A stretch of 63,867 nucleotides of DNA, counting the filler, from Guillardia theta CCMP2712 (Eukaryota; Protista; Cryptophyta): NCBI RefSeq assembly GCF_000315625.1. It is 3 parts of 3 records of this genome, joined end to end, with 100 filler letters (N's around TTAATTAATTAA, not from the genome) between each part and the next. Parts side by side here need not be neighbours in the genome. Positions count along the whole stretch, not along the records: positions 39,741 to 63,867 come from NW_005434371.1; 2 more parts are not named here. One strand, written 5' to 3'. The notes under the pieces were generated by a model that was not told where the DNA came from, did no database searches, and saw only the letters and a list, made by a program, of their open reading frames with translations. Both the position numbers and the translations under genes were made by a program. Shown here in pieces: positions 3,197-63,783 of this stretch (within the stretch, counting starts at the first letter, position 1; every line of letters starts with the position of its first letter).

Positions 3197-4880
3197 GTAC
3201 TGATTTTAACTTAACTTTGAGTAAAGGGATTGACTACTGAGGACTATTCCGACCTTCAAGGTCTATTAGAGCACCCGCGATGATGGCAGCGTAGGACAGG
3301 GAGGCCTTGAGCTGACGGAAGATCCTGGACCGAATGCGTTTGCAAGTCGGATCACCTGAGACGTCTTGCGAGGCCGAGAGACCATCCAGCGCTGCCGTTT
3401 CCTTGTTCGCCGAGCGATCCGCCAGCCACCACAGAAAGCGCAATGCATCATCCTGCAAGAGTCCATCAGTGCTGGCGATGATGGGAAGAAAGCCCTTTGG
3501 CGGGACGTGCAGAGCATATGCATTACGGTGCCCTCGGATCTTCCTCTGTGCTGCTGCTTGCAGTTTACTCCGAGCCAGGTCCGGTATCCCATCATTGTCA
3601 AAAACATGTGACATGCTGAAGTCCAGGATTAACCCATGCCATCGGCCTGTAGTAGCCTGCAATTGCGGAAGTTCAAAATCCCCTACGTGATGATCGTCAG
3701 GGCCATGCTGGGAAATGTTCCGCCTGGTGCCGGGAACGCCTTGCACGTGGACGCGACATCTCACTCCTGAATCTTTGATGAGGGTACTGAGGGCGGCATT
3801 GCACTTCTCATGCGCATCCGTCCATAACGGGCTGCGGTGCCTGCAGGTTGCCATGTGTGTGGCCCCCCCAGGTGCGGGTTTTTCTCTTCTCGGCGCCGTT
3901 TGGCCTCGGGCCTGTGCGATCGGACCGCTACTACGGAAAGGTCGGAAGAGAGGGCACTGAATTAAAACCAACGATGGGAGGTACACGATGGGGGAGCTGG
4001 ATTGTTGTATCCATGCTCAGGATGCAAGCCTGATGTACCATCATCTTTGCGCGAATGAGTATTTAGAATCGGAAGGATACAACGCCTGTGAATGTTGGCA
4101 ACGTGGGGAAACAGCGATTTCCTCAATTTCTTAGGATAAGCTTGCATCCCTCGCAAGAAGTCATCTCGAGGGATCTGATCATGGCGCAATACGCTATGTG
4201 TTGATGTGCGAAACTGACAATTTTCAGGTCATCCCCACTATCTTCGTGGCTCTTTATGTTACATGGAACTTGTACAGTGATGGACTAACTCTTTCTCGAG
4301 AGCTCTTCCTTACGTCAATTGTAAAACGATTTCAAGTGCCACGGAATAGCACGACAACAATTTGGCCAGACCAATACATCAAGAATTTCGCCAAGTCACC
4401 TGATGATGACTTCATCAAACAGAAGCCGAGCTTCATACACTCTCTGCCCACTTGCAGAGATTTGTCATTTTTCGTGCTTTCTTCACGTTCTGCGCATGAG
4501 AGTGAACAATCCAACTCGTTTACTGCATCGTCAATCAAGATCTTGCAACCGTGCACTTGCTCAGATGTAACTCGTCGAGCTCGAACAGGAAACCTTCGTT
4601 CCGGACCAGGTCTCTTCATATGATCAACTTGCTGATCTCTCACCAAGATCATTCCATTTCTGCTTGTTTGTCGCAATGCAATGGCCATTATCGGCTGGCA
4701 AGCATCCGGGGGGTTGAATACCGCTGAGATCGAAAACGTTGTTGTTGTTGTTTTATGCTTCAGGGAACCCCATTCAGACACTTGTGGCCGCAGGGCGCAC
4801 TCTGCATGACATGCTGGTGCTATGACATTGAGAATCGTCGGGTTAGCGCGACACTCCAGGTCAAACAACCCAAGCAGAGA
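3197..4880 (-). mobile_element. Degenerate non-LTR retrotransposon 3' part with restriction-like endonuclease (CRE/R2-like)
   Basis: ORF 3234..3986(-) has HMATC (end of a CCHC knuckle), AHE, GD...LILD..SH, AAQRK and FLPIIASTDG, matching the RLE C-terminus of CRE/R2-type elements. Upstream frames (3962-4868) are broken and no RT domain is seen. A short 3' UTR ends in the 31-bp repeat. Confidence 0.6.
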
Positions 4881-5285
4881 GTGCGATGGATCGTGGTGAT
4901 GTACTAAGACTTAGAGCGGTGAACGAACCCAACCAGAATCATCTCCTCACTAGTATTCGTTATGTTGCTTTGACAAGACTAAAGGAGAAACGGCTCACGG
5001 TCGTCGCCTGCTTGCTCCCGTTGCAAGCTTCTTCGTTCCGAGTCCCCTCCCGCCCTTCCCCTCCCGATCTAGACTTCCTCTCCCTTGCAAGCTTCTTTGT
5101 TCCAAATGTCACCTCTCCCATCTTCTCTTCACCGGATCGATACGACACAGGCATTCGGAATATAAATACGTTCCTTCAATTTGTTCGGAGAGACATCATA
5201 ATGCCAATCAAATACAGAATACATGTAATCTGCAACTTTGTCGGATATCCATGAATCAGATGGCTGCCATGCAGATCGTATGGTA

Positions 5286-8200
5286 TCATTCCAAAGACAC
5301 CTCAATTCCACTGTCAAGTCTCCCCGTCGCCTCAGGTGCATTGCTTTCTGTCACAAGGCGCGCTGAACCGCAGAATGGTTCTGTTTTCAATCCAATCTCC
5401 ACTATGATTAGCACTCTTTTACGCGTACCCGTCTGAGCCTTGCCTCCCTCGTTACCGCGTTTCCTCCTCTTGAATTCTGGTTCGACAATTGACGGGACTG
5501 TGGCAAACCATTTTCTACCTGCCCTCAAATGCAAGACCAGCCATTCAGTGTTGGAGGTTCTTGGCACCACAAATCTTTTGCGAGCTTTTTTTGATAACGC
5601 CGATACCATGCACAGGTTGACATCCAGATCCTGTGACACTAGCCCTGAAAGGACGTCGAACAAGTATTTCGGGGCAAGAGGAGAGGATAAGTTCTTGAAC
5701 TCCGCTCCACCCTTCCACCTCTGCTTGTTTGCACAAGTCGGCCCTGCGAATGTGCCATCCCTGCCCTGTACATCTTTGTTACGTGTATAAAAGCCCAAGA
5801 TAGCGGACAGGGAATGATCCTGCTCGCTCTCCTTGACAGGGACAAGGTTGCTCACGCACGAGGTTAGCATCTCTGCAAAGATTTCCTTGTTTGGAATAGA
5901 AGCAAGAATACCGTTCACACTTCTCTCGTCTGTTATACCGCAATGAAAAGCGATTCGCTTCAGAAGGTTCTGAGGACGAGACCAGCTGCTGATCATCATG
6001 ACCACTGCCCCAAACGACTCCAGGAGATTCCCGTCTCGCTTCCACGCATCCAAACTCAGAGGATCATGTCCCAACGACTGATTCTTGTGAATCATCTGCA
6101 AGACCGCAAGCGCTGACTCATTAGAGAAAGGTCTCCCACCTCCTGCACAAACAGCTGTCGTTATGGGATCGAGCACTGCAGGAGGAAACCTCGAAGTTAT
6201 CTCGGAAAGCATGGTGCCTTCCATCCACGGATTCTCGTGCTTTATACTGACCTCCACGATTGATTCGTCACTGTCACGGGCTGGCGGATCCTCCATTTTC
6301 CATATATTCAGCTGAGCAAACCCCTGGGAGATATGCAGCTGAGAGACGGCTTCATGTGCAGCAATCTGAAACATGCAGTATTTTGACTCTACCCTCCAAT
6401 TCGGTTTGCGCGCCCTGACTGTATTATGGACCAATAATGATATCCGTCGGAGAACTACATGTGCTTCGGCGTTCATATATCGGGAGTCTTTCAGGACCTC
6501 AGTCACAAAAAGGTCGCAGATCATTGGATTGACGCAGTCCAGTAGCTTGGGTACCAGTGCCTCCCCGAAAATCCTGTTCAGGGCCTTTTGAGCTCTCTTT
6601 GACGGCAAGATATATGGAGGAAGAGAGCGATGTGTCAAGCAGAGCATTATTCGACCAGCCTCGCGACTGTGTTCAGACACTCGCGCATCCTGTACGAAAT
6701 TCATGACCAGAGTGTTGGTCCCCAACATGATGCAGTTGATTCCAGAGTTGGTCAATAACCTTTTCAAGAACACGAGCTTTGCGATTATTGAGAAAAAGCG
6801 AGCATCGTCTTTCCGAGGAGGAATCACCTCGTCCACAAGCACCCAACGCGTTTTCCACTCAGCTGCCTCTTCTATAGAAACGGGGGCGATGGTGGTCAAC
6901 TCATCCCACAGCCAGCCAAGGACTCCCAGCACATGCCACCTGCTTGGTTGTCCGGTGCTGAAATTGAAATTCAATGCGGTCAGAGGATCTGTTTTCTTCA
7001 TCGACCCGACATACTGCCTTGTCAAGATGCTAAGATCGCACTCTAATGCCTTGCTCATCAGTTGCGTGATCAACTGCAAGTTCTGGTAGATGGGTTGCAC
7101 TTGGTATGTCTGGTCCCCTTCTACAGGGTTGAAGAGAAACAAAATGCTGTCATCTACATTCCGAACAAAGTAATCGGCAGCGCAAAGAGACTTTCCACTC
7201 CCAGAGCAAGCTTCTACTAAGCAGACGTAAGTTTCCTTATCGTTTCGCGCTTTCATGACCAGTTTGTTGATTGGGTTCAAATCACTGAATTGCTTGCTTG
7301 GTTGTACCCATGATGATGTTGGCTTCCATCCTCCATCAAGGCTCTCTTTCAAGCCTTTCCTCAACTTCTTCGCCATTTGTTTTACGTTGACTTTAGCGGC
7401 CATTTTACACAGAACTGCACCAAACGCAGTCAGGGTATTCAACTCCGGGCCAGCATAAAGGCTCACCTGAAAGGAACTTGCCTGCGCCATCACACTGGTG
7501 TGAGATCAGAGCATACCTTGCAACCTCGAGCTCCCTGCTAAGTCGAGCAGCATCTTCCCCTGTTGCATTTCTGAGCAATTCACTCACAGTTGCCACAGAG
7601 AGATTGAGATTCGCCTCCGTCAAATTTCTTTTAGCATGCGCCAACTCCTCGTCGCCTTCAAACTTGGCTAGCTTAAGCTCATCTTTACTCAGCTGCACTT
7701 GTGCCTCCGCTGTCTTCTTGTCGTTGCCTTCAAACTTGGCTAGCTTAAGCTCCTCTTTACTCAGCTGCACTTGTGCCTCCGCAGTCTTCTTCTTGTTGCC
7801 TTCAAACTTGGCTAGCTTAAGCTCATCTTTACTCAGCTGCACTTGTGCCTCCGCTGTCTTCTTGTCGTCGCCTTCAAGCTCGGCTAGCTTAAGCTCATCT
7901 TTACTCAGCTGCACTTGTGCCTCCGCTGTCTTCTTCTTGTTGCCTTCAAGCTCGGCTAGCTTAAGCTCATCTTTACTCAGCCGCACTTGTGCCTCCGCTG
8001 TCTTCTTCTTGTCGTCTTCAAGCTCGGCTAGCCTAAGCTGCTCTTTTCTCAGCCGCACTTGTGCCTCCGCTGTCTTCTTCTTGTCGCCTTCAAGCTCGGC
8101 TAGCCTAAGCTGCTCTTTTCTCAGCCGCACTTGTGCCTCCGCTCTCTTCTTGTCGCCTTCAAGCTCACTGTCAGCTCCCTTGAGCACAGTCAGATCGTGC

Positions 8201-39740: not shown

Positions 39741-41649
39741 TTTAAATAGAAGGGTGAGGACAAGCCCTGCTTCCTTTTGTGCTGCAGCATGTGGGTGAGA
39801 GAGTACAAGAGGAGAGGAGAGGAGAGGAGAGGGGAGGAGAGGAGAGGAGAGGAGAGGAGAGGATGGGTTTGGGGAGGAGAGGAGAGGAGAGGATGGGTTT
39901 GGAGAGGAGAGGAGAGGAGAGGAGAGGAGAGGAGAGGAGAGGAGAGGAGAGGAGATCAGGAGAGGGCAGCAAGAGGAGAGGAGGAAGGAGTGAAACATGG
40001 GATTGCACTTCTGCTCTCCTCATCAAATTTCTCTCATCTCACAGGTTGCATCTTCCGCTGAGCATGACGTAGACGGCGTCGGGGACCTCGTCTTGTCTGA
40101 ATAGGAAGTCGCCCTCAGTCTGCAAGGACGACGCGCAGTGATATCAGCAAGGGCGAGCATGACGGGAGGGAAAAGCCTGTCCTTCACCTTAGTCGTCAAT
40201 ACGGCAACGCTTGCAAGCTCCTGCGTCTGCGCCTCCGAGAAAGACTGGAAGAACTTGAACTTGCGAACGATGGAGAGAAGCTTCTCGATCCTGTCATGGA
40301 GGTTCGTAGACTCGAGGCTCTTCATCAACTGGAACTCGTTGGGCGCTATGTTGGTCTTGCCCACCACCTGACGGGCTCAAGTCATGAGACGGTAAGGCGA
40401 CAGAGACACGAGAGAACTGACGGAGATCGCTGCTGCCTTGTGAACAGCCTTGGAGACCTGAGACGAGTGACGTCATGACACGTCGGTCAGCTACCGCCAC
40501 CTCCCTTACTTTCTTCCGAAGTTTCGACTGATGGTGGTTCAGAAGGTAATCCCACTTTGGCAGCTTCAACTCTTCCTTGTCTTCTTTGCTCGCTTCAGCC
40601 GAATCATCCTTCTTCTTCCTTCCCAGCGCCACTGCCGCAAACACCTTCATCGCAACCCTCGCCATGTTTCCTTTCTTCGCCAGCTGAGGAGCTGCATCTT
40701 GCTTTCCGTCTTGCTCCTCGCGTGCATTAGCATGTAGGCGATTGGTCAGGTCCCGAAGAGAAGGTTTGTTCAAGACGCGCTGACTGCCGTGCGATGCGAC
40801 GAGAGATTTCTGACTGCTGTTGTTCCCCAGCACTTCAGACCTCAACTCATCTTTCTGCATCGCCGAATGTCTGACAAGACCCGTCAGATCCGCTATCAAC
40901 TTCGTCTTCCTCAACAAGGGCGCCCAGTATGCCCCGTGGTGGTGTCGAGGGGAGAGCTGTCGCTCAGGGGTGGGAGGAGAGACGACGGTAAGGGTCCCTT
41001 GAGGAACGTGGAGGTCCGATGTCTGTCGACGTAGAGCATGCCTGCGAGGGGACGTCTTGGTTTCCTTTCCTTCCTCGCCGTCGGGGTCCGTCACCTCAAC
41101 GCTATGAGAGGAGGGGTGGCTGGAGAAGAGCTGAGGGAGCGAGTTGGACTGCAAGGAGAAATCTTTGATGTTGACGTTACGACGAGGGGAGATCTTGAAG
41201 TTCTTGCTGGAGTTGAGGAAGGGGCCCTCAGTAGGGTTGGAGGAGGAGGAGGCGGCTGGCTTCAGGAGGGACAAGCGCGAGCGATGGACTTGGGCTTGGT
41301 CCTCATGATGAGCCAGGAGGGAGAAGTGGTGGGGTCGACCTTGAGACTGAGTAGAGAAGCTTCGCTCGGTCTCAAGTGGGGATGCGAGGGAGGATGCGAG
41401 GGGGGATGCGAGGGGGGTTGCTGGTGGGGAGCGTCGGAGACGGAGGGAGCAAGGGGAGGAGAGGAGAAGGCAAGTGGGGAGCGACGAGGAAGCAAGTGGG
41501 GGAGGCGAAGGGGGGTGCTGGTGGAGAGCGTCAGAGACGGAGGGAGCAAGGGGAGAAGACGAGGAAGCAGGATCAAGAGAGGAGGAAGGAAGAAGAGTCG
41601 GAGAGTGAGGGGACGGTAGCTCGGCAGCGAACGTCGCCATGGTTGGCAA
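39741..41649 (-). CDS. Cyclic-nucleotide-binding domain protein (3' end in gap)
   Basis: KFKFFQSFSEAQTQELASV followed by an exon reading EGDFLFRQDEVPDAVYVMLSGRC (cNMP beta-roll start). Long disordered N-terminal exon. Confidence 0.7.
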
Positions 41650-43914: not shown

Positions 43915-44646
43915 TCAAATTTCATCCACGTTCAGCTCACACTGCTCGTACCACTTGAGCCAGTTGCGATCTTTCGCGTCAAACGGCGTCCAGAGGCAGG
44001 GCCAAGAACCTGACATGCTGCTGGACTCTGACTCCTCCACGCCCTGCTCTGAAGCCTCCGACTCACTCCCAGCAGAAACTACTCGATGCGATCGCTGCTG
44101 CTCGAAGGAGGCTGCAGGTGAGTCAAAGACTAGTATGCTCTCAGTCAAACCAGAGATCTCATCCTCTGACTCCGCATCGTCCACACTGCCACAAGCTTCT
44201 TCTGATGCAGTAGTCATTGGTTGTTTAACGAACGGTTCGTTCTCATTCCAAGAGCTCGCGCGGCTCTGCTGTGCATCCATGGGGTTGGGCTCAGGGGCTT
44301 CTGCTACAGGGGTCACTTGTGGAGGCGGGTCAGCAAGTGTCTCAGAGGGGTTGAGAGCCCAGCGGCTGTATGGCCATCGCCTGATACCGAACTTGCGACA
44401 TGCAAGCTTGAGGCTGGTGACCGACATGCCCTGGACAGGAAGTGAGCGGTTGAAGCCTTCCTCCTACAACTCTCATGCTGACAAGAGCGAAATCAAGAGA
44501 TATCTCACCAAGCGTCTTGCTGCCATCTCCTGGGGAAGGTGGAACAGGGCCTGGAGGGTAGGAAGGGAGATGCTGACTGGGGGAGGAGGGGTGGAGCAGT
44601 CGCCGCGAGGGCGCGGAGAAACAAGAACATGAGCGGAAGAGTTCAT
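43915..44646 (-). CDS. RWP-RK domain transcription factor (2 exons)
   Basis: ATG at 44646. ISLPTLQALFHLPQEMAARRL | GTGAG..CAG | GMSVTSLKLACRKFGIRRWPY is a complete RWP-RK motif. Confidence 0.9.
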
Positions 44647-45219
44647 GAACCTGGACAGTCAGACGACAAGGGGAGCAGGAGGCGAGGGCGATGGCCGAGG
44701 TCTGCCGGTGAAGGAATGGAGGGGTAGGGAGGGAGGTGCAACGGCTTTCCATTAGACCTCATTTCATACAACGATTGCCTGTTGCTTCCATCGAAAAGAC
44801 CTCTGTTGGATGGGAGATGCACCGTGGCAGCCACACCGAATACGGCGGAACTTGTCGGAAGCCATAAGTCCCTAATCATTGAAGTGCCACTCAAACTCGG
44901 CCGGGACCCACTTGGGCCGTGGAATCGATCTGGGGAGGTAGAGGCACGGGAGCACAAAAAGGTACAAGTGCAGGCTGCTCGTCGGAGTTGGTCAAGGCGG
45001 AAGCCAACAAGGTTCAGATGTCCTTTGAGTTGCTCGCTGTGCGCAGGCCTGCTTCCCGAGCCCTCCCTGCTGCATATATACCCCACTACCCCCCGAGGTT
45101 GCTGTCACAGGAAGGAACAAGCAGGAGCTCAAGCAGCGAGCAGACGACGACTGACCTTGTATATGCTGGTTGTCGCGGTCCAAGGTCGAGATCGCGGAAA
45201 CCAAAACGAAGCATTCATT

Positions 45220-46533
45220 TCAGAACAACTCATACGTGTTATACACAGATGCTTTGATCACAGTCTTTTTGGGCTGAGGTCTTGCGGGAGGGGCTGGGAG
45301 GATGTTGGGGATGGATGTCTGCCACCATAGCTTGAAGTGTGCGATGTTGGTCTCCACCTCGCTCGGACGAAAGTCGCTGAGCTTCAGGGTGACCCTGTCG
45401 TTGTCCAGTGCGGTGTATGGGTTGCCCAACGGGATGGAGACATAGCCGTCATCTCCGGAGTCCCAGAGCTTTGGAGAGAAAGGAGCCCTGAGCATGCGAC
45501 TGGGCTCCGACAGTGACGGGTCTATCAAGAACCCCGTCTTCCTGCACTCCAGCTCGATGCAAGCATAGGCAATAGAGATCTTGACATACTCAGGGGTCTT
45601 GAACATGCTTTTGGTCTGGAACCACGACACCCTCTCCTGCATGGTCTCAATCCACTCGTGTACCTCTGCGATGGTGGTCATTGCCGATACCGGTGCGAAC
45701 AGGTTGAGCACATACTTTCGTGCTATCCCATGCACAAAGCAGCAGAGCTGGTGGAGGACACTCTTGATTGGCCCGTATTGCGAGAGCCAATGAGGGTGAG
45801 TGTTGCAAGCCTGAATGAAGTAGGGCTCGATCCTCTGGTACCATACCCTGTTCCAGTACGGTATCCAGACAACCTCTCCTGCATCTGTGAGGACATCATC
45901 CTGCCACTTGTAATCTTGAGAATGCAGCGAGATGTAGGTGTTGGACACCGTGCGGGAGCTGAGGATGGGCACCGGTGCGACGGACTTGTAGATGGAGGAG
46001 CGGATGTTGGTCTCCGTGTCTCTCTGCCACTCCTCTGCCGAGGAGCTCCAATAGAGTTGCTTGAAGGCAAAGTAGATGTGCCATCCCTTGCCGCTGCAGC
46101 ACACCATGATCTGATTGATGTCCTTGGTCGACTCGCGGACAAAGTTGGTGTACACCCCCTGGCAGATCTGGCTGATCATGAGGAGGTGGACGAGAGGGTC
46201 CAGCGTCACGGTGTCAATGTCCATCACGAGCATCCTGTTGCATGGATGGTAGGTTTGATTGGTGCCGGTCACTGGGATGTTGAGCTCGGCCCCGAGGTGC
46301 AGAGAGCAGATGTCATTCTTCCTTATGAAGTCATAGAGGTCCGAGACCGGGTCCCGACGGATGGGCTTGCCCTTGAAGGTGGACATCTTGAACGCCATGA
46401 TGTCTGCATGCTTGAGGCCCTGGAAGGGGAAGAAGATCTTGGCTATCATATCGAAGATGCCTCTTTCCTGGAGGTAATGGAAGAGAGTACGCACACCCTG
46501 TCTGCCACGTGCTGACACCTGTGTGGGACACAT
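45220..46533 (-). CDS. Archaeo-eukaryotic primase (AEP/PriS-like), intronless, copy 1
   Basis: 437 aa. Motif I LVMDID, motif II CSGKGWHIY, motif III IDPSLSEPSRMLRAPFS. TATAAAG lies ~32-38 bp upstream. Confidence 0.85.
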   Translation of the reverse strand: MCPTQVSARGRQGVRTLFHYLQERGIFDMIAKIFFPFQGLKHADIMAFKMSTFKGKPIRRDPVSDLYDFIRKNDICSLHLGAELNIPVTGTNQTYHPCNRMLVMDIDTVTLDPLVHLLMISQICQGVYTNFVRESTKDINQIMVCCSGKGWHIYFAFKQLYWSSSAEEWQRDTETNIRSSIYKSVAPVPILSSRTVSNTYISLHSQDYKWQDDVLTDAGEVVWIPYWNRVWYQRIEPYFIQACNTHPHWLSQYGPIKSVLHQLCCFVHGIARKYVLNLFAPVSAMTTIAEVHEWIETMQERVSWFQTKSMFKTPEYVKISIAYACIELECRKTGFLIDPSLSEPSRMLRAPFSPKLWDSGDDGYVSIPLGNPYTALDNDRVTLKLSDFRPSEVETNIAHFKLWWQTSIPNILPAPPARPQPKKTVIKASVYNTYELF

Positions 46534-46593
46534 GGAGATGGCAAGGGGGTCATGATGAGGGAGGCTTTATAGCAACCCTCCCCTAGTCCCGAA

Positions 46594-46664
46594 ATGTGCT
46601 GGAACTGTGCTTGAATTGTGCTGAAACATTTCTAGCACAATTCAGACACAGTTCCTGGCGACAT
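46594..46664. repeat. ~70-nt imperfect hairpin in the palindrome spacer; its 3' arm (46644-46664) is also a perfect 21-bp inverted repeat of 46802-46822
   Basis: ATGTGCTGGAACTGTGCTTGAATTGTGCT-gaaacatttct-AGCACAATTCAGACACAGTTCCTGGCGACAT; ATGTCGCCAGGAACTGTGTCT at 46802. Confidence 0.9.
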
Positions 46665-46823
46665 ACTACCGAAGCCCCTACCCCCACCTCCTACCCTAGG
46701 CCCAACCACCCTCGCCTCCCCCGTAGTCAGCTAGGAAACGGAGGCTGCTCTCACAGGCTCGCCTCAAAGATGGAGCTGAGAAGACTCCAGAACTTTCCGG
46801 GATGTCGCCAGGAACTGTGTCTA

Positions 46824-46830
46824 TATAAAG
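46824..46830 (+). promoter_or_regulatory. TATA-like box TATAAAG upstream of primase copy 2 (mirror at 46565-46571 on minus strand)
   Basis: Present in both arms at the same distance from the ATG, and it marks the inner end of the inverted repeat. Confidence 0.5.
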
Positions 46831-46861
46831 TCTCCCTCATCATGACCCCCTTGCCATCTCC

Positions 46862-48175
46862 ATGTGTCCCACACAGGTGTCAGCACGTGGCAGACAGGGT
46901 GTGCGTACTCTCTTCCATTACCTCCAGGAAAGAGGCATCTTCGATATGATAGCCAAGATCTTCTTCCCCTTCCAGGGCCTCAAGCATGCAGACATCATGG
47001 CGTTCAAGATGTCCACCTTCAAGGGCAAGCCCATCCGTCGGGACCCGGTCTCGGACCTCTATGACTTCATAAGGAAGAATGACATCTGCTCTCTGCACCT
47101 CGGGGCCGAGCTCAACATCCCAGTGACCGGCACCAATCAAACCTACCATCCATGCAACAGGATGCTCGTGATGGACATTGACACCGTGATGCTGGACCCT
47201 CTCGTCCACCTCCTCATGATCAGCCAGATCTGCCAGGGGGTGTACACCAACTTTGTCCGCGAGTCGACCAAGGACATCAATCAGATCATGGTGTGCTGCA
47301 GCGGCAAGGGATGGCACATCTACTTTGCCTTCAAGCAGCTCTATTGGAGCTCCTCGGCAGAGGAGTGGCAGAGAGACACGGAGACCAACATCCGCTCCTC
47401 CATCTACAAGTCCGTCGCACCGGTGCCCATCCTCAGCTCCCGCACGGTGTCCAACACCTACATCTCGCTGCATTCTCAAGATTCCAAGTGGCAGGATGAT
47501 GTCCTCACAGATGCAGGAGAGGTTGTCTGGATACCGTACTGGAACAGGGTATGGTACCAGAGGATCGAGCCCTACTTCATTCAGGCTTGCAACACTCACC
47601 CTCATTGGCTCTCGCAATACGGGCCAATCAAGAGTGTCCTCCACCAGCTCTGCTGCTTTGTGCATGGGATAGCACGAAAGTATGTGCTCAACCTGTTCGC
47701 ACCGGTATCGGCAATGACCACCATCGCAGAGGTACACGAGTGGATTGAGACCATGCAGGAGAGGGTGTCGTGGTTCCAGACCAAAAGCATGTTCAAGACC
47801 CCTGAGTATGTCAAGATCTCTATTGCCTATGCTTGCATCGAGCTGGAGTGCAGGAAGACGGGGTTCTTGATAGACCCGTCACTGTCGGAGCCCAGTCGCA
47901 TGCTCAGGGCTCCTTTCTCTCCAAAGCTCTGGGACTCCGGAGATGACGGCTATGTCTCCATCCCGTTGGGCAACCCATACACCGCACTGGACAACGACAG
48001 GGTCACCCTGAAGCTCAGCGACTTTCGTCCGAGCGAGGTTGAGACCAACATCGCACACTTCAAGCTATGGTGGCAGACATCCATCCCCAACATCCTCCCA
48101 GCCCCTCCCGCAAGACCTCAGCCCAAAAAGACTGTGATCAAAGCATCTGTGTATAACACGTATGAGTTGTTCTGA
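46862..48175 (+). CDS. Archaeo-eukaryotic primase (AEP/PriS-like), intronless, copy 2
   Basis: 437 aa. Differs from copy 1 at two residues (DTVT/DTVM; QDY/QDS) plus a few silent changes. Confidence 0.85.
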   Translation: MCPTQVSARGRQGVRTLFHYLQERGIFDMIAKIFFPFQGLKHADIMAFKMSTFKGKPIRRDPVSDLYDFIRKNDICSLHLGAELNIPVTGTNQTYHPCNRMLVMDIDTVMLDPLVHLLMISQICQGVYTNFVRESTKDINQIMVCCSGKGWHIYFAFKQLYWSSSAEEWQRDTETNIRSSIYKSVAPVPILSSRTVSNTYISLHSQDSKWQDDVLTDAGEVVWIPYWNRVWYQRIEPYFIQACNTHPHWLSQYGPIKSVLHQLCCFVHGIARKYVLNLFAPVSAMTTIAEVHEWIETMQERVSWFQTKSMFKTPEYVKISIAYACIELECRKTGFLIDPSLSEPSRMLRAPFSPKLWDSGDDGYVSIPLGNPYTALDNDRVTLKLSDFRPSEVETNIAHFKLWWQTSIPNILPAPPARPQPKKTVIKASVYNTYELF

Positions 48176-49083
48176 AATGAATGCTTCGTTTTGGTTTCCG
48201 CGATCTCGACCTTGGACCGCGACAACCAGCATATACAAGGTCAGTCGTCGTCTGCTCGCTGCTTGAGCTCCTGCCTCCTCTTGCCCCCCGTCTCTCCTGT
48301 CTCTCCTGTCCTGCCTCCTCTTGACCCTCTCTCCTGTGACTCCTGTCCTGCCCGATCCCTTCCCTTGTTCCTTCCTGTTGTCGGGGCTCCAACCGAAGCC
48401 CCCACCCCCACCCCCTGTCCTAGCCCACCCCACAACCCTCGCCTCCCCCGCAGCCAGCTAGGAAACGGAGGCTGCTGTCACAGGCTCGCCTCAGAGAGGG
48501 AGCTGACGGCAACCTCGGGGGGTAGTGGGGTATATATGCAGCAGGGAGGGCTCGGGAAGCAGGCCTGCGCACAGCGAGCAACTCAAAGGACATCTGAACC
48601 TTGTTGGCTTCCGCCTTGACCAACTCCGACGAGCAGCCTGCACTTGTACCTTTTTGTGCTCCCGTGCCTCTACCTCCCCAGATCGATTCCACCCAGACCC
48701 AGCGCTCAGGCTAGAGGCTCGCAGGCCCGAGGGGACACGGGCGGAACGTGGGCCCCGGCCGAGTTTGAGTCCGATCACTGATTAGGGACTTATGCAACAG
48801 AGGTCTTTTCGATGGAAGCAACAGGCAATCGTTCTATGAAACTTGAGGTCTCCCTACCCCTCCATTCCTTCTCCGGCAGACCTCGGCCATCGCCCTCGCC
48901 TCCTGCTCCCCTTGTCGTCTGAGAAACCTTTTAGTCAACAGATCAGTCAGTAGTGATTTTCAACACCCTTTCGGAAAATTGTCTTTTTTTTTCCACGCGA
49001 CCCCCACCCCCACCTCAATCTGACCCCTCCTTCTCCCTGTTGGGGCACAGTAACTACGGGGGTACCTTTCGCGGCTCTTGACA

Positions 49084-50240: not shown

Positions 50241-50383
50241 GAAAAGTTACCAGCACAAGTTTTTGGTAGTGATGCCTAGATTGTGCTGATAACTTTTCAA
50301 ATATCGTGTGATAGATAGATTGTACTGAAAATTTTCCAGCACAATTCGAGTGATAGCTAGATTGTGCTGTAAATGTTTTAGAG
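50241..50383. repeat. Iteron-like cluster: three 20-bp GTGAT..[C/A]TAGATTGT[G/A]CTG units plus an 18-bp inverted repeat
   Basis: Units at 50269, 50308 and 50350. GAAAAGTTACCAGCACAA (50241-50258) is inverted to TTGTGCTGATAACTTTTC (50281-50298). Confidence 0.8.
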
Positions 50384-51156: not shown

Positions 51157-51996
51157 TCAGCTCCTTGCCTGCTTGTACCTGCTGCTCCCTCCCCCGCATC
51201 CCTTGCATACCGATCGCTGCTGTCCGTGCTCGCATATGCTGCTGCCCCCGCATCCCTTGCATTTCGATCGGACCCGCCCGTGCTCGCATATGCTCCCGCC
51301 CCCGCAGTCCTTGCATTGCGATCGGACCCGCCCGTGCTCGCATATGCTGCTGCCCCCGCATCCCTTGCATACCGACCGGACCCGCCCGTGCTCGCATATG
51401 CTGCTGCCCCCGCATCCCTTGCACCTCGATCGCTCTCGCCCGTGCTCGCATATGCTGCTGCCCCCGCATCCCTTGCATACCGACCGGACCCGCCCGTGCT
51501 CGCATATGCTCCCGCCCCCGCATCCCTTGCATACCGATCGCTGCTGTCCGTGCTCGCATATGCTGCTGCCCCCGCATCCCTTGCACCTCGACCGGACCCG
51601 CCCGTGCTCGCATATGCTGCTGCCCCCGCATCCCTTGCATACCGACCGGACCCGCCCGTGCTCGCATATGCTCCCGCCCCCGCATCCCTTGCATACCGAT
51701 CGCTGCCGCCCGTGCTCGCATATGCTGCTGCCCCCGCATCCCTTGCACCTCGACCGGACCCGCCCGTGCTCGCATATGCTGCTGCCCCCGCATCCCTTGC
51801 ATACCGACCGGACCCGCCCGTGCTCGCATACACCCCTTCCTTTCCTTCTCTTCTCTATGTCTCCATCGACCATACCTTCCTCTTCTCGTTCCTCTCTCGT
51901 CTTGCCTGATCCCTCCAGCCTCCTCCTCTTGCTCGACCTGCCGCTGCCGTCTACCGTCATGGCTTTCCACCTGTGCTCAGACTTCATCCCCCTCAT
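51157..51996 (-). CDS. Cys/His-rich repeat protein, 12 x 18-aa CEHG.xRSxCK.CGG.SI zinc-finger-like repeats
   Basis: 54-bp tandem coding repeat with invariant C-x-H-x6-C-x2-C spacing. Confidence 0.75.
   Translation of the reverse strand: MRGMKSEHRWKAMTVDGSGRSSKRRRLEGSGKTREEREEEGMVDGDIEKRRKGRGVCEHGRVRSVCKGCGGSSICEHGRVRSRCKGCGGSSICEHGRQRSVCKGCGGGSICEHGRVRSVCKGCGGSSICEHGRVRSRCKGCGGSSICEHGQQRSVCKGCGGGSICEHGRVRSVCKGCGGSSICEHGRERSRCKGCGGSSICEHGRVRSVCKGCGGSSICEHGRVRSQCKDCGGGSICEHGRVRSKCKGCGGSSICEHGQQRSVCKGCGGGSSRYKQARS

Positions 51997-58173: not shown

Positions 58174-63783
<5,610 letters not shown>

What the first reader, a model, noticed from the sequence alone, without database searches (positions are those of the whole stretch)
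44659..48922. Palindromic element with two head-to-head, intronless AEP primase genes: candidate new fold-back mobile element or hairpin replicon junction
Seen: two 437-aa ORFs diverge from a ~250-bp spacer inside a ~4.3-kb imperfect palindrome. They differ at only two amino acids and a few silent sites, and each has TATAAAG at the same distance upstream. The outer arms are related but rearranged by indels. Established: DxD, SGxGxH and D..R..R.P.S are the three AEP catalytic motifs, and divergent AEPs occur in DNA viruses and mobile elements. Inference: the gene has no introns in a genome full of them and lacks the housekeeping PRIM1 look. No transposase, integrase or capsid gene is visible, so this may be a primase-only element propagated by fold-back or template-switch replication, or an integrated head-to-head junction of a hairpin-ended replicon.
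Basis: partly seen in the sequence, partly recalled or inferred. Interest (0 to 1): 0.9.

Follow-up and report, generated by a model that had tools for sequence, protein, structure and literature searches.

The report
Inverted duplicate of divergent primase gene
A cryptophyte alga (Guillardia theta) carries two almost identical, head-to-head copies of a very divergent primase-like gene; this looks like a young local inverted duplication of a lineage-specific gene, not a new mobile element.

Summary
Window 44659-48922 is a 4.26-kb imperfect palindrome. Its two intact 437-aa ORFs differ at 2 residues and each has TATAAAG 38 bp before the ATG.

The piece is the whole of Guillardia theta CCMP2712 nuclear scaffold JH993267.1.

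No sequence library recognises the protein (Pfam, NCBIfam, PHROGs, PDB sequences). A confident AlphaFold model (pLDDT 87) matches the catalytic primase subunit PriS/PRIM1 over its full length (Foldseek E 5e-10, 12-13% identity). The DxD, SGxGxH and D...LR motifs are invariant in all 14 relatives. It is therefore a PriS-type AEP, but not the housekeeping PRIM1.

The family is tiny: 12 clusters among 1.84 billion proteins. Members come from Guillardia, Hanusia transcripts and a few unassigned contigs.

The mobile-element and hairpin-junction readings find no support:
- Only one locus carries copies at 90% identity or more.
- There is no target-site duplication.
- The centre (137 bp) is not palindromic.
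- Host genes abut the structure.
- The partner genes that accompany this primase at every other locus are absent here.

Best reading: a recent inverted duplication (dS 0.007), or one kept uniform by gene conversion.

Side lead: other family members sit in repeated blocks of ORFan genes that may derive from a virus.

The parts
44659..46571 (-). Left arm of the palindrome (gene, about 560 bp downstream of it, 38 bp upstream)
45220..46533 (-). Left copy of the PriS-like AEP gene: 437 aa, intact, intronless
46565..46571 (-). TATAAAG 38 bp before the left ATG
46572..46643 (.). 72-bp insertion specific to the left arm; with its flank it forms a 55-nt imperfect hairpin (46601-46655)
46644..46664 (.). 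21-nt segment perfectly complementary to 46802-46822 (inner continuation of the arms)
46665..46801 (.). Unique, non-palindromic, C-rich centre (137 bp). 46668-46779 recurs in direct orientation at 48392-48506 (87%)
46802..46822 (.). Partner of the 21-nt inner inverted repeat
46824..46830 (+). TATAAAG 38 bp before the right ATG
46824..48922 (+). Right arm of the palindrome
46862..48175 (+). Right copy of the PriS-like AEP gene: 437 aa, intact, intronless. This copy was modelled with AlphaFold2
48275..48503 (.). 229-bp insertion specific to the right arm (13 bp in the left arm): a 37-bp tandem repeat (48269-48352) plus a copy of the central sequence (48392-48506)
43915..44646 (-). Neighbouring host gene, not part of the palindrome: an RWP-RK domain split over two exons, with a candidate ATG 13 bp from the left edge

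Best explanation
The structure is a real, local inverted duplication in the nuclear genome of Guillardia theta. It is either young or kept uniform by arm-to-arm gene conversion. About 2 kb was copied head-to-head: one intronless gene, roughly 560 bp downstream of it, and its TATA box. This gives two divergently transcribed, near-identical genes on either side of a short unique centre. The gene encodes a catalytically intact, stand-alone, highly divergent PriS-type archaeo-eukaryotic primase. It belongs to a small family so far seen only in cryptophytes. Shown: the anatomy, the fold, the conserved catalytic residues, the narrow distribution, purifying selection on a paralogue pair, and the lack of mobile-element hallmarks. 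Inferred: (1) origin by a replication or repair template switch (fold-back type), followed by small insertions and a tandem-repeat expansion in the non-coding parts; (2) both copies are expressed from their own TATA boxes, doubling dosage; (3) the enzyme primes or extends DNA independently of the Pol-alpha primase. The family's ultimate origin is possibly a large DNA virus or other selfish element, because elsewhere it sits in repeated ORFan gene blocks.
For: Source and context: the piece equals G. theta scaffold JH993267.1. Nearby genes look like host genes: PDZ/RasGAP, RWP-RK and Ank. GC content across the palindrome matches the flanks.
Protein: the AlphaFold2 model has pLDDT 87.4 and pTM 0.88. 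The 41 Foldseek hits with E<=0.001 are all eukaryotic or archaeal PriS (best E 5e-10, about 440 aligned columns, TM 0.5-0.6), while LigD-pol and poxvirus D5 AEP domains reach only E~1e-2. D105, D107, G150, H152, D338, L348, R349 and K355 are invariant in 14 sequences that share 18-57% identity apart from two near-identical pairs (88% and 95%). One member gives weak PriS hits in two libraries (Pfam E 0.027; TIGR00335 E 0.004).
Selection: dN/dS is 0.17 between the L003 and L004 paralogues. Four family members occur in the Hanusia phi transcriptome set.
Palindrome: the arms differ by 5 of 1451 positions (dS 0.007), yet they also differ by several indels (72 bp; 229 vs 13 bp; 30 vs 8 bp; 107 vs 99 bp). 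The centre is unique. These features do not fit one sequence read twice.
Copy number: the 90% cluster holds only these two proteins on one contig. HMMs of the usual partner families B-F find nothing on the scaffold.
Against: No read-level data were available, so an assembly artefact is not excluded. Expression of these two copies is not shown; no transcript of this subtype was found. The whole G. theta genome could not be searched at the DNA level, so unannotated extra copies of the palindrome remain possible. Every other family member lies in a recurrent multi-gene neighbourhood, which hints at a selfish or viral past that the plain duplication reading does not explain. The proposed template-switch origin is inference only.
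Confidence: 0.6

Rival explanations
1. Assembly artefact: a single-copy gene, or two alleles, was joined head-to-head in the Sanger scaffold.
For: The scaffold is short (24 kb), rich in repeats and contains a gap. The assembly holds near-duplicate blocks on different scaffolds that could be haplotigs. The exact protein was seen on one contig only.
Against: A fold-back chimera would be symmetric through its centre, but here 137 bp are unique. The arms differ by 5 substitutions and at least four indels, including 229 vs 13 bp. The other duplicate blocks in this assembly differ by 1-7%, against 0.3% between the core arms.
Confidence: 0.12
2. The palindrome is a piece of a selfish replicon: a fold-back element that carries only a primase, or the integrated inverted-terminal or head-to-head junction region of a hairpin-ended (virus-like) linear DNA.
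For: The primase is divergent, intronless and lineage-specific. Its relatives sit in multi-copy blocks of closely packed ORFan genes that also hold a very divergent TBP-like gene and a DcpS-like gene. G. theta is listed among assemblies with mirusvirus-like capsid genes (PMC10827195), and it carries polinton-like viruses (PMC12220804). BFVD fold hits include viral PriS-like primases.
Against: There is no second locus at 90% identity or more. No target-site duplication is present. The arms are not built of subrepeats. The centre is not palindromic and is GC-rich. No partner or virion-like gene lies on the scaffold, and host genes abut it. No relatives were found in IMG/VR or JGI metagenome contigs by pattern scans. 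A type-2 block is collinear, host flank included, in a related species.
Confidence: 0.12
3. The gene is the host's ordinary PRIM1 orthologue, locally duplicated.
For: The best fold matches are human and yeast Pri1.
Against: The window protein and all but one of the 11 relatives scanned give no DNA_primase_S or TIGR00335 hit; P0004 alone gives sub-threshold ones. Identity to Pri1 is 12-13%. No conserved Cys/His cluster corresponds to the PriS zinc knuckle. G. theta has at least 6 diverged paralogues. The family is absent outside cryptophyte-like sources in 1.84 billion proteins.
Confidence: 0.02

Closest known systems
Eukaryotic/archaeal primase catalytic subunit PriS (PRIM1/Pri1; Pfam DNA_primase_S, TIGR00335)
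   Same: Full-length fold match (Foldseek E 5e-10, TM 0.5-0.6). The DxD, SGxGxH and D...LR motifs sit on the expected strands.
   Different: Only 12-13% identity, and below every sequence-model threshold. No conserved zinc-knuckle cysteines. Multi-copy and restricted to one lineage. No PriL-like partner identified.
Viral PriS-like primases (baculovirus LEF-1; adomavirus EO2-4/EO3 proteins)
   Same: Divergent PriS-type AEPs encoded outside the cellular replisome. They match the model in BFVD at E 1e-8 to 5e-4.
   Different: The match is weaker than to cellular PriS. They come from animal viruses and often form part of much longer proteins. No sequence-level relation was found.
AEP-superfamily-3-helicase fusions of polinton-like viruses already described in G. 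theta (PMC12220804)
   Same: An AEP domain encoded in cryptophyte nuclear DNA, of non-housekeeping type.
   Different: The window protein has no helicase domain. It belongs to the PriS clade rather than the D5-like clade (D5 AEP domains reach only E~2e-2). No capsid, ATPase or integrase gene lies nearby.
Gene-bearing genomic palindromes kept uniform by arm-to-arm gene conversion (for example primate Y-chromosome palindromes; from my own knowledge)
   Same: Arms more than 99% identical, a unique spacer, intact gene pairs.
   Different: The scale is 2-kb arms rather than tens of kb to Mb. Gene conversion is not demonstrated here.
Foldback transposons, and concatemer junctions of hairpin-ended viral genomes (from my own knowledge)
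   Same: Long inverted arms around a short centre.
   Different: No target-site duplication, no subrepeat-built termini, a single locus, a non-palindromic centre, and no other element genes.

Membership tests
AEP superfamily, PriS clade | Motif I DxD (metal ligands) | tested here: met
   D105 and D107 are invariant in 14 of 14 sequences and lie on strand 102-107 of the model.
AEP superfamily, PriS clade | Motif II sGxGxH | tested here: met
   G150 and H152 are invariant and W151 nearly so. They lie on the hairpin 142-155.
AEP superfamily, PriS clade | Motif III acidic residue plus downstream basic residues that bind the nucleotide | tested here: met
   D338, L348, R349 and K355 are invariant; S353 is nearly invariant.
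AEP superfamily, PriS clade | PriS-type fold over the full length | tested here: met
   The 41 PDB hits with E<=0.001 are all PriS (best E 5e-10, probability 1.00, about 440 columns). Other AEP clades reach only E>=1e-2.
AEP superfamily, PriS clade | Recognition by the curated sequence models (PF01896, TIGR00335) | tested here: not met
   No hit for the window protein. Only sub-threshold hits for relative P0004.
AEP superfamily, PriS clade | Zinc-knuckle Cys/His cluster of cellular PriS | tested here: not met
   Only C145, C325, H79 and H152 are conserved; there is no four-ligand cluster. The positional equivalence was not checked on coordinates.
AEP superfamily, PriS clade | Primer synthesis activity; partnership with a PriL-like subunit | not testable with these tools
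   No biochemical data. The conserved neighbours B-F have no recognisable domains.
Housekeeping PRIM1 orthologue | Clear sequence orthology to PRIM1, single copy | tested here: not met
   12-13% identity, no Pfam hit, and at least 6 paralogues in G. theta.
Foldback-type transposon | Many copies sharing the same ends; target-site duplication; termini built of subrepeats | tested here: not met
   One locus among annotated proteins. No duplication at 44659/48922. The arms are unique sequence plus a gene. A genome-wide DNA search was not possible.
Head-to-head junction of a hairpin-ended replicon | Symmetry through the axis; further replicon genes in the arms | tested here: not met
   A 137-bp asymmetric centre. 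The arms end after 2 kb next to host genes.
Polinton-like virus / virophage insertion | Capsid genes, packaging ATPase, integrase, primase-helicase or protein-primed polymerase, terminal repeats | tested here: not met
   None of these domains was found on the scaffold. Divergent capsid proteins would escape Pfam.
Endogenous mirusvirus-like element | HK97-type capsid, triplex, portal and terminase genes near the gene | not tested
   This is only a literature lead for the assembly as a whole.

The most novel reading that the evidence does not exclude
The PriS-like primase, its recurrent ORFan partners (families B-F), the very divergent TBP-like gene and the DcpS-like gene together mark an undescribed lineage of endogenous large DNA virus or other multi-gene selfish element of cryptophytes. 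It might be related to the mirusvirus-like signals reported for this assembly. On this reading the window's palindrome is a surviving piece of that element's inverted terminal or junction region, or a primase gene captured from it.
Probability: 0.1. Interest if true: 0.75.

Novelty: new variant of a known kind. Interest (0 to 1): 0.42.

Why it matters
The result adds a structurally clear but sequence-invisible branch to the PriS side of the AEP superfamily. The branch is confined so far to cryptophyte algae and has expanded to several paralogues under purifying selection. This raises the question of what a second, stand-alone primase does in these cells. It also raises the question of whether the gene came from a large DNA virus, because most members sit in repeated blocks of unknown genes. 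The palindrome itself is a small, clean example of a gene-bearing inverted duplication. It is not evidence for a new class of mobile element.

Tried and rejected
- Sequence searches with the 437-aa protein found nothing: Pfam, PHROGs, NCBIfam and PDB sequences. A 14-sequence profile against PDB gave only chance hits.
- The first AlphaFold run, with 2 sequences, was useless (pLDDT 35). The 14-sequence run worked.
- The indexed protein search with the family profile added no members.
- Pattern scans of IMG/VR and JGI metagenome contigs found no relatives of the primase and none of families C and F or of two of F's metagenomic relatives. Two scans failed for lack of conserved stretches.
A profile HMM of the primase family (A2) together with those of B-E found none of the five in the Tara contig.
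- Pfam on 35 neighbouring ORFs gave almost only blanks.
- A test for a shared TATA-like promoter in block genes was inconclusive: 16 of 34 against 6 of 27 controls, with a motif chosen after looking.
- Literature searches for the gene names and the SRA run ids found nothing.
- Not done for lack of a query or collection: a search for the canonical G. theta PRIM1, a profile-profile comparison with a PriS alignment, and a DNA search of the whole G. theta genome.
Full report
**What is there**

Window 44659-48922 is an imperfect palindrome.
- The core arms, 45110-46571 and 46824-48285, are 1462 nt and 99% complementary. An ungapped comparison shows 5 mismatches in 1451 positions.
- Three outer segments continue the symmetry at 96-99%: 44919-45107 / 48504-48692, 44762-44811 / 48792-48841, and 44659-44731 / 48850-48922. 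Indels separate them.
- Each arm holds an intact 437-aa ORF, 45220-46533 on the minus strand and 46862-48175 on the plus strand. The two are 435/437 identical, with 2 synonymous and 2 non-synonymous differences (dS 0.007).
- TATAAAG lies 38 bp before each ATG.
- The 252-bp 'spacer' is not all unique. A perfect 21-nt inverted repeat (46644-46664 / 46802-46822) continues the arms, and the left arm has a 72-bp insertion that forms a small hairpin. Only 46665-46801 (137 bp, C-rich) is unique.
- Part of that centre (46668-46779) recurs in direct orientation at 48392-48506. This sits inside a 229-bp insertion specific to the right arm, which also holds a 37-bp tandem repeat.

**Where it comes from**

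The exact protein is encoded on Guillardia theta CCMP2712 scaffold JH993267.1 (24127 bp, GCA_000315625.1), which is the whole piece.

The surroundings look like host DNA:
- A spliced RWP-RK gene has its domain split over two ORFs, and its candidate ATG at 44646 is 13 bp from the left edge.
- An 808-aa PDZ/RasGAP gene and an ankyrin fragment lie further along.
- GC content across the palindrome (0.55) does not stand out.
- About half of the genes called on this scaffold and around the paralogues are also intronless, so the lack of introns says little.

**What the protein is**

Sequence libraries do not recognise it. Pfam, PHROGs, NCBIfam and PDB sequences all gave nothing.

An exhaustive HMMER search of 1.84 billion cluster representatives found only 12 clusters. 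They come from:
- G. theta paralogues;
- four Hanusia phi transcriptome sequences;
- a few contigs from unassigned sequencing runs.

With 14 of these sequences as the alignment, AlphaFold2 gave a confident model (pLDDT 87.4, pTM 0.88).

Foldseek against the PDB returned 41 hits at E<=0.001. All are the catalytic primase subunit PriS from human, yeast, Xenopus, Tetrahymena or Pyrococcus. The best has E 5e-10, about 440 aligned columns, TM 0.5-0.6 and 12-13% identity. Other AEP clades (the LigD polymerase domain, poxvirus D5) reach only E~1e-2.

In BFVD the matches are viral PriS-like primases (adomavirus EO2-4/EO3, baculovirus LEF-1), and they are weaker.

D105, D107, G150, H152, D338, L348, R349 and K355 are invariant across sequences that mostly share only 18-57% identity. 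They lie on the strands expected for AEP motifs I-III. One relative gives sub-threshold PriS hits in two independent libraries.

No conserved Cys/His cluster corresponds to the PriS zinc knuckle.

Conclusion: this is a PriS-type AEP with an intact active site, but it is not the housekeeping PRIM1. I could not search for the canonical G. theta PRIM1 because no tool supplies a query by name.

**The family and its neighbourhood**

The family splits into two groups.
- The window copies and P0002 (57% identical, on scaffold JH993205.1) form one group, together with P0003, P0004 and P0013.
- The second group holds P0005 and P0015 (G. theta), the Hanusia sequences, and P0007, P0009 and P0012.

The 628-aa model of P0002 looks like a fusion of a 436-aa primase ORF with the next gene.

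At every locus other than the window, the primase has neighbours drawn from the same five ORFan families, in varying order and with very short intergenic spaces:
- B: about 200 aa, with several hydrophobic segments.
- C and D: about 185 aa each.
- E: about 220 aa, with 7 invariant cysteines.
- F: about 300 aa.

None of these has a Pfam or PDB-sequence match. HMMs of B-F find nothing on the window's scaffold, so the palindrome carries the primase alone.

The type-2 primase lies in a block of about 20 kb that occurs on at least three G. theta scaffolds at 93-99% identity, with mosaic relationships.
- The block also holds a DcpS-like gene and a very divergent TBP-like gene, which scores only about 94 bits against solved TBPs.
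- The two primase copies compared give dN/dS 0.17.
- A metagenome contig from a related organism (82-89% DNA identity) is collinear with the block, including the Tcp11 host gene at its flank. The block is therefore an old, conserved resident of the genome.

Family F has more than 90 relatives in marine metagenomes. In gene-dense Tara contigs of up to 110 kb it again follows a DcpS-like gene. The organism or virus behind those contigs is unknown.

A preprint lists this G. theta assembly among those with mirusvirus-like capsid genes (PMC10827195). Another reports TBP as a mirusvirus core gene (10.1101/2021.12.27.474232).

This is a lead for a viral origin of the family, not a result. I had no structure jobs left to fold the ORFans, and pattern scans of IMG/VR found no relatives.

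**Is the palindrome a mobile element, a hairpin junction or an artefact?**

Against a fold-back element:
- The 90% cluster holds only the two proteins of this locus, on one contig.
- The sequences just outside 44659 and 48922 share no target-site duplication.
- The arms are made of a gene plus unique sequence, not subrepeats.
- The non-coding parts have no copies in about 150 kb of other G. theta loci fetched here.

Against a head-to-head junction of a hairpin-ended replicon:
- The axis is not symmetric (137 unique bases).
- The centre is GC-rich.
- Symmetry stops after 2 kb, directly next to a host gene.

Against a simple assembly artefact:
- A fold-back chimera, or two alleles joined head-to-head, would be symmetric to the centre.
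- The arms differ by several indels (72 bp, 229 vs 13 bp, 30 vs 8 bp, 107 vs 99 bp) as well as by substitutions.

Read-level data are still needed to settle the artefact question.

**Most likely mechanism**

A local inverted duplication placed two copies of the gene head-to-head. It probably arose from a template switch or fold-back event during replication or break repair (inferred).

The low and even substitution divergence (about 0.5% across coding and non-coding segments), combined with several indels, fits one of two histories. Either the event was recent and was followed by repeat expansion and small insertions, or arm-to-arm gene conversion is ongoing. The data do not separate these.

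Each copy keeps its own TATA box 38 bp before the ATG, and the two are transcribed away from the short centre. Expression is inferred, not shown.

The enzyme has an intact active site and its paralogues are under purifying selection. It most likely acts as a stand-alone primase or primase-polymerase outside the Pol-alpha primase complex. Its substrate is unknown.

**Comparison, novelty and score**

It works like PriS, and by fold and motifs it belongs to the PriS clade. It fails the curated sequence models and lacks the conserved zinc-ligand pattern, so I file it as a new, divergent variant of a known kind.

It differs from the AEP-helicase fusions of the polinton-like viruses already known in G. 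theta (PMC12220804). I found no paper that mentions these genes.

The palindrome itself is ordinary genome architecture. Interest is moderate (0.42). The interest lies in the unrecognised primase family and its possibly virus-derived gene blocks, not in a new class of mobile element.

The profile HMMs made in scripts served only as search profiles. I fetched no animal, human or crop virus. None of the genes described is broken, so there are no breaks to count.

Noticed in passing
L003 3700-21416; L004 3200-22554 with L011 1-11400; L012 5677-18270; L013: G. theta holds at least three copies, 93-99% alike with mosaic relationships, of a block of about 20 kb. The block consists of tightly packed, mostly intronless ORFan genes and includes a type-2 PriS-like gene, families B, C, D and F, a DcpS-like gene and a very divergent TBP-like gene. 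A related organism's metagenome contig (L010) is collinear with it, including the Tcp11 host flank.
   Followed up: partly
L014-L016 9123-11047 (Tara Oceans contigs up to 110 kb, GC 41%): Family F (about 300 aa, no known domain) has more than 90 relatives in marine metagenomes. In these gene-dense ORFan contigs it again directly follows a DcpS_C gene, as in the G. theta block. The source organism or virus is unknown, and no primase-family member lies within the 21 kb read.
   Followed up: partly
L001 3873-6322: The 628-aa annotated protein GUITHDRAFT_148779 (P0002) looks like a fusion. It appears to join a 436-aa primase ORF (3873-5183) to the neighbouring family-B membrane-like ORF (5029-5745).
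   Followed up: partly
L001 12379-16322 and L005 1-9843: Giant genes lie next to primase loci in two organisms (a 4512-aa model in L001; an ORF of at least 3257 aa in L005, called as 4273 aa). They share 72% identity over the 81 residues that overlap in the fetched DNA. No Pfam domain was found in the L005 ORF.
   Followed up: no
window 46601-46655 and 50277-50373: The 72-bp insertion in the left arm, with its flank, forms a 55-nt hairpin. Its core motif recurs (86% over 29 nt) in a 42-bp tandem array about 3.6 kb away. This may be a small repeated hairpin motif.
   Followed up: no
window 51183-51830: An array of 54-bp units (about 12 copies, 87% matches; higher-order period 162 bp) lies inside long ORFs on both strands, under a called 238-aa gene.
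   Followed up: no
window 60993-61243; 60450-60549; 39808-39955 and 59899-60032: A perfect (GCT) run of about 84 copies, a 100-N scaffold gap, and AGAGG pentamer arrays near one scaffold end and again next to the gap.
   Followed up: no
L007 42-1013: A 323-aa ORF beside a primase-family gene gives a near-threshold Glyco_transf_25 hit (E 9e-5).
   Followed up: no
upstream regions of genes in L001-L011 and the window: A TATA-like box 22-48 bp before the ATG occurs in 16 of 34 primase-block genes, including the window copies, against 6 of 27 other genes. The motif was chosen after looking, so this is only a hint of short leaders and a shared promoter type.
   Followed up: partly
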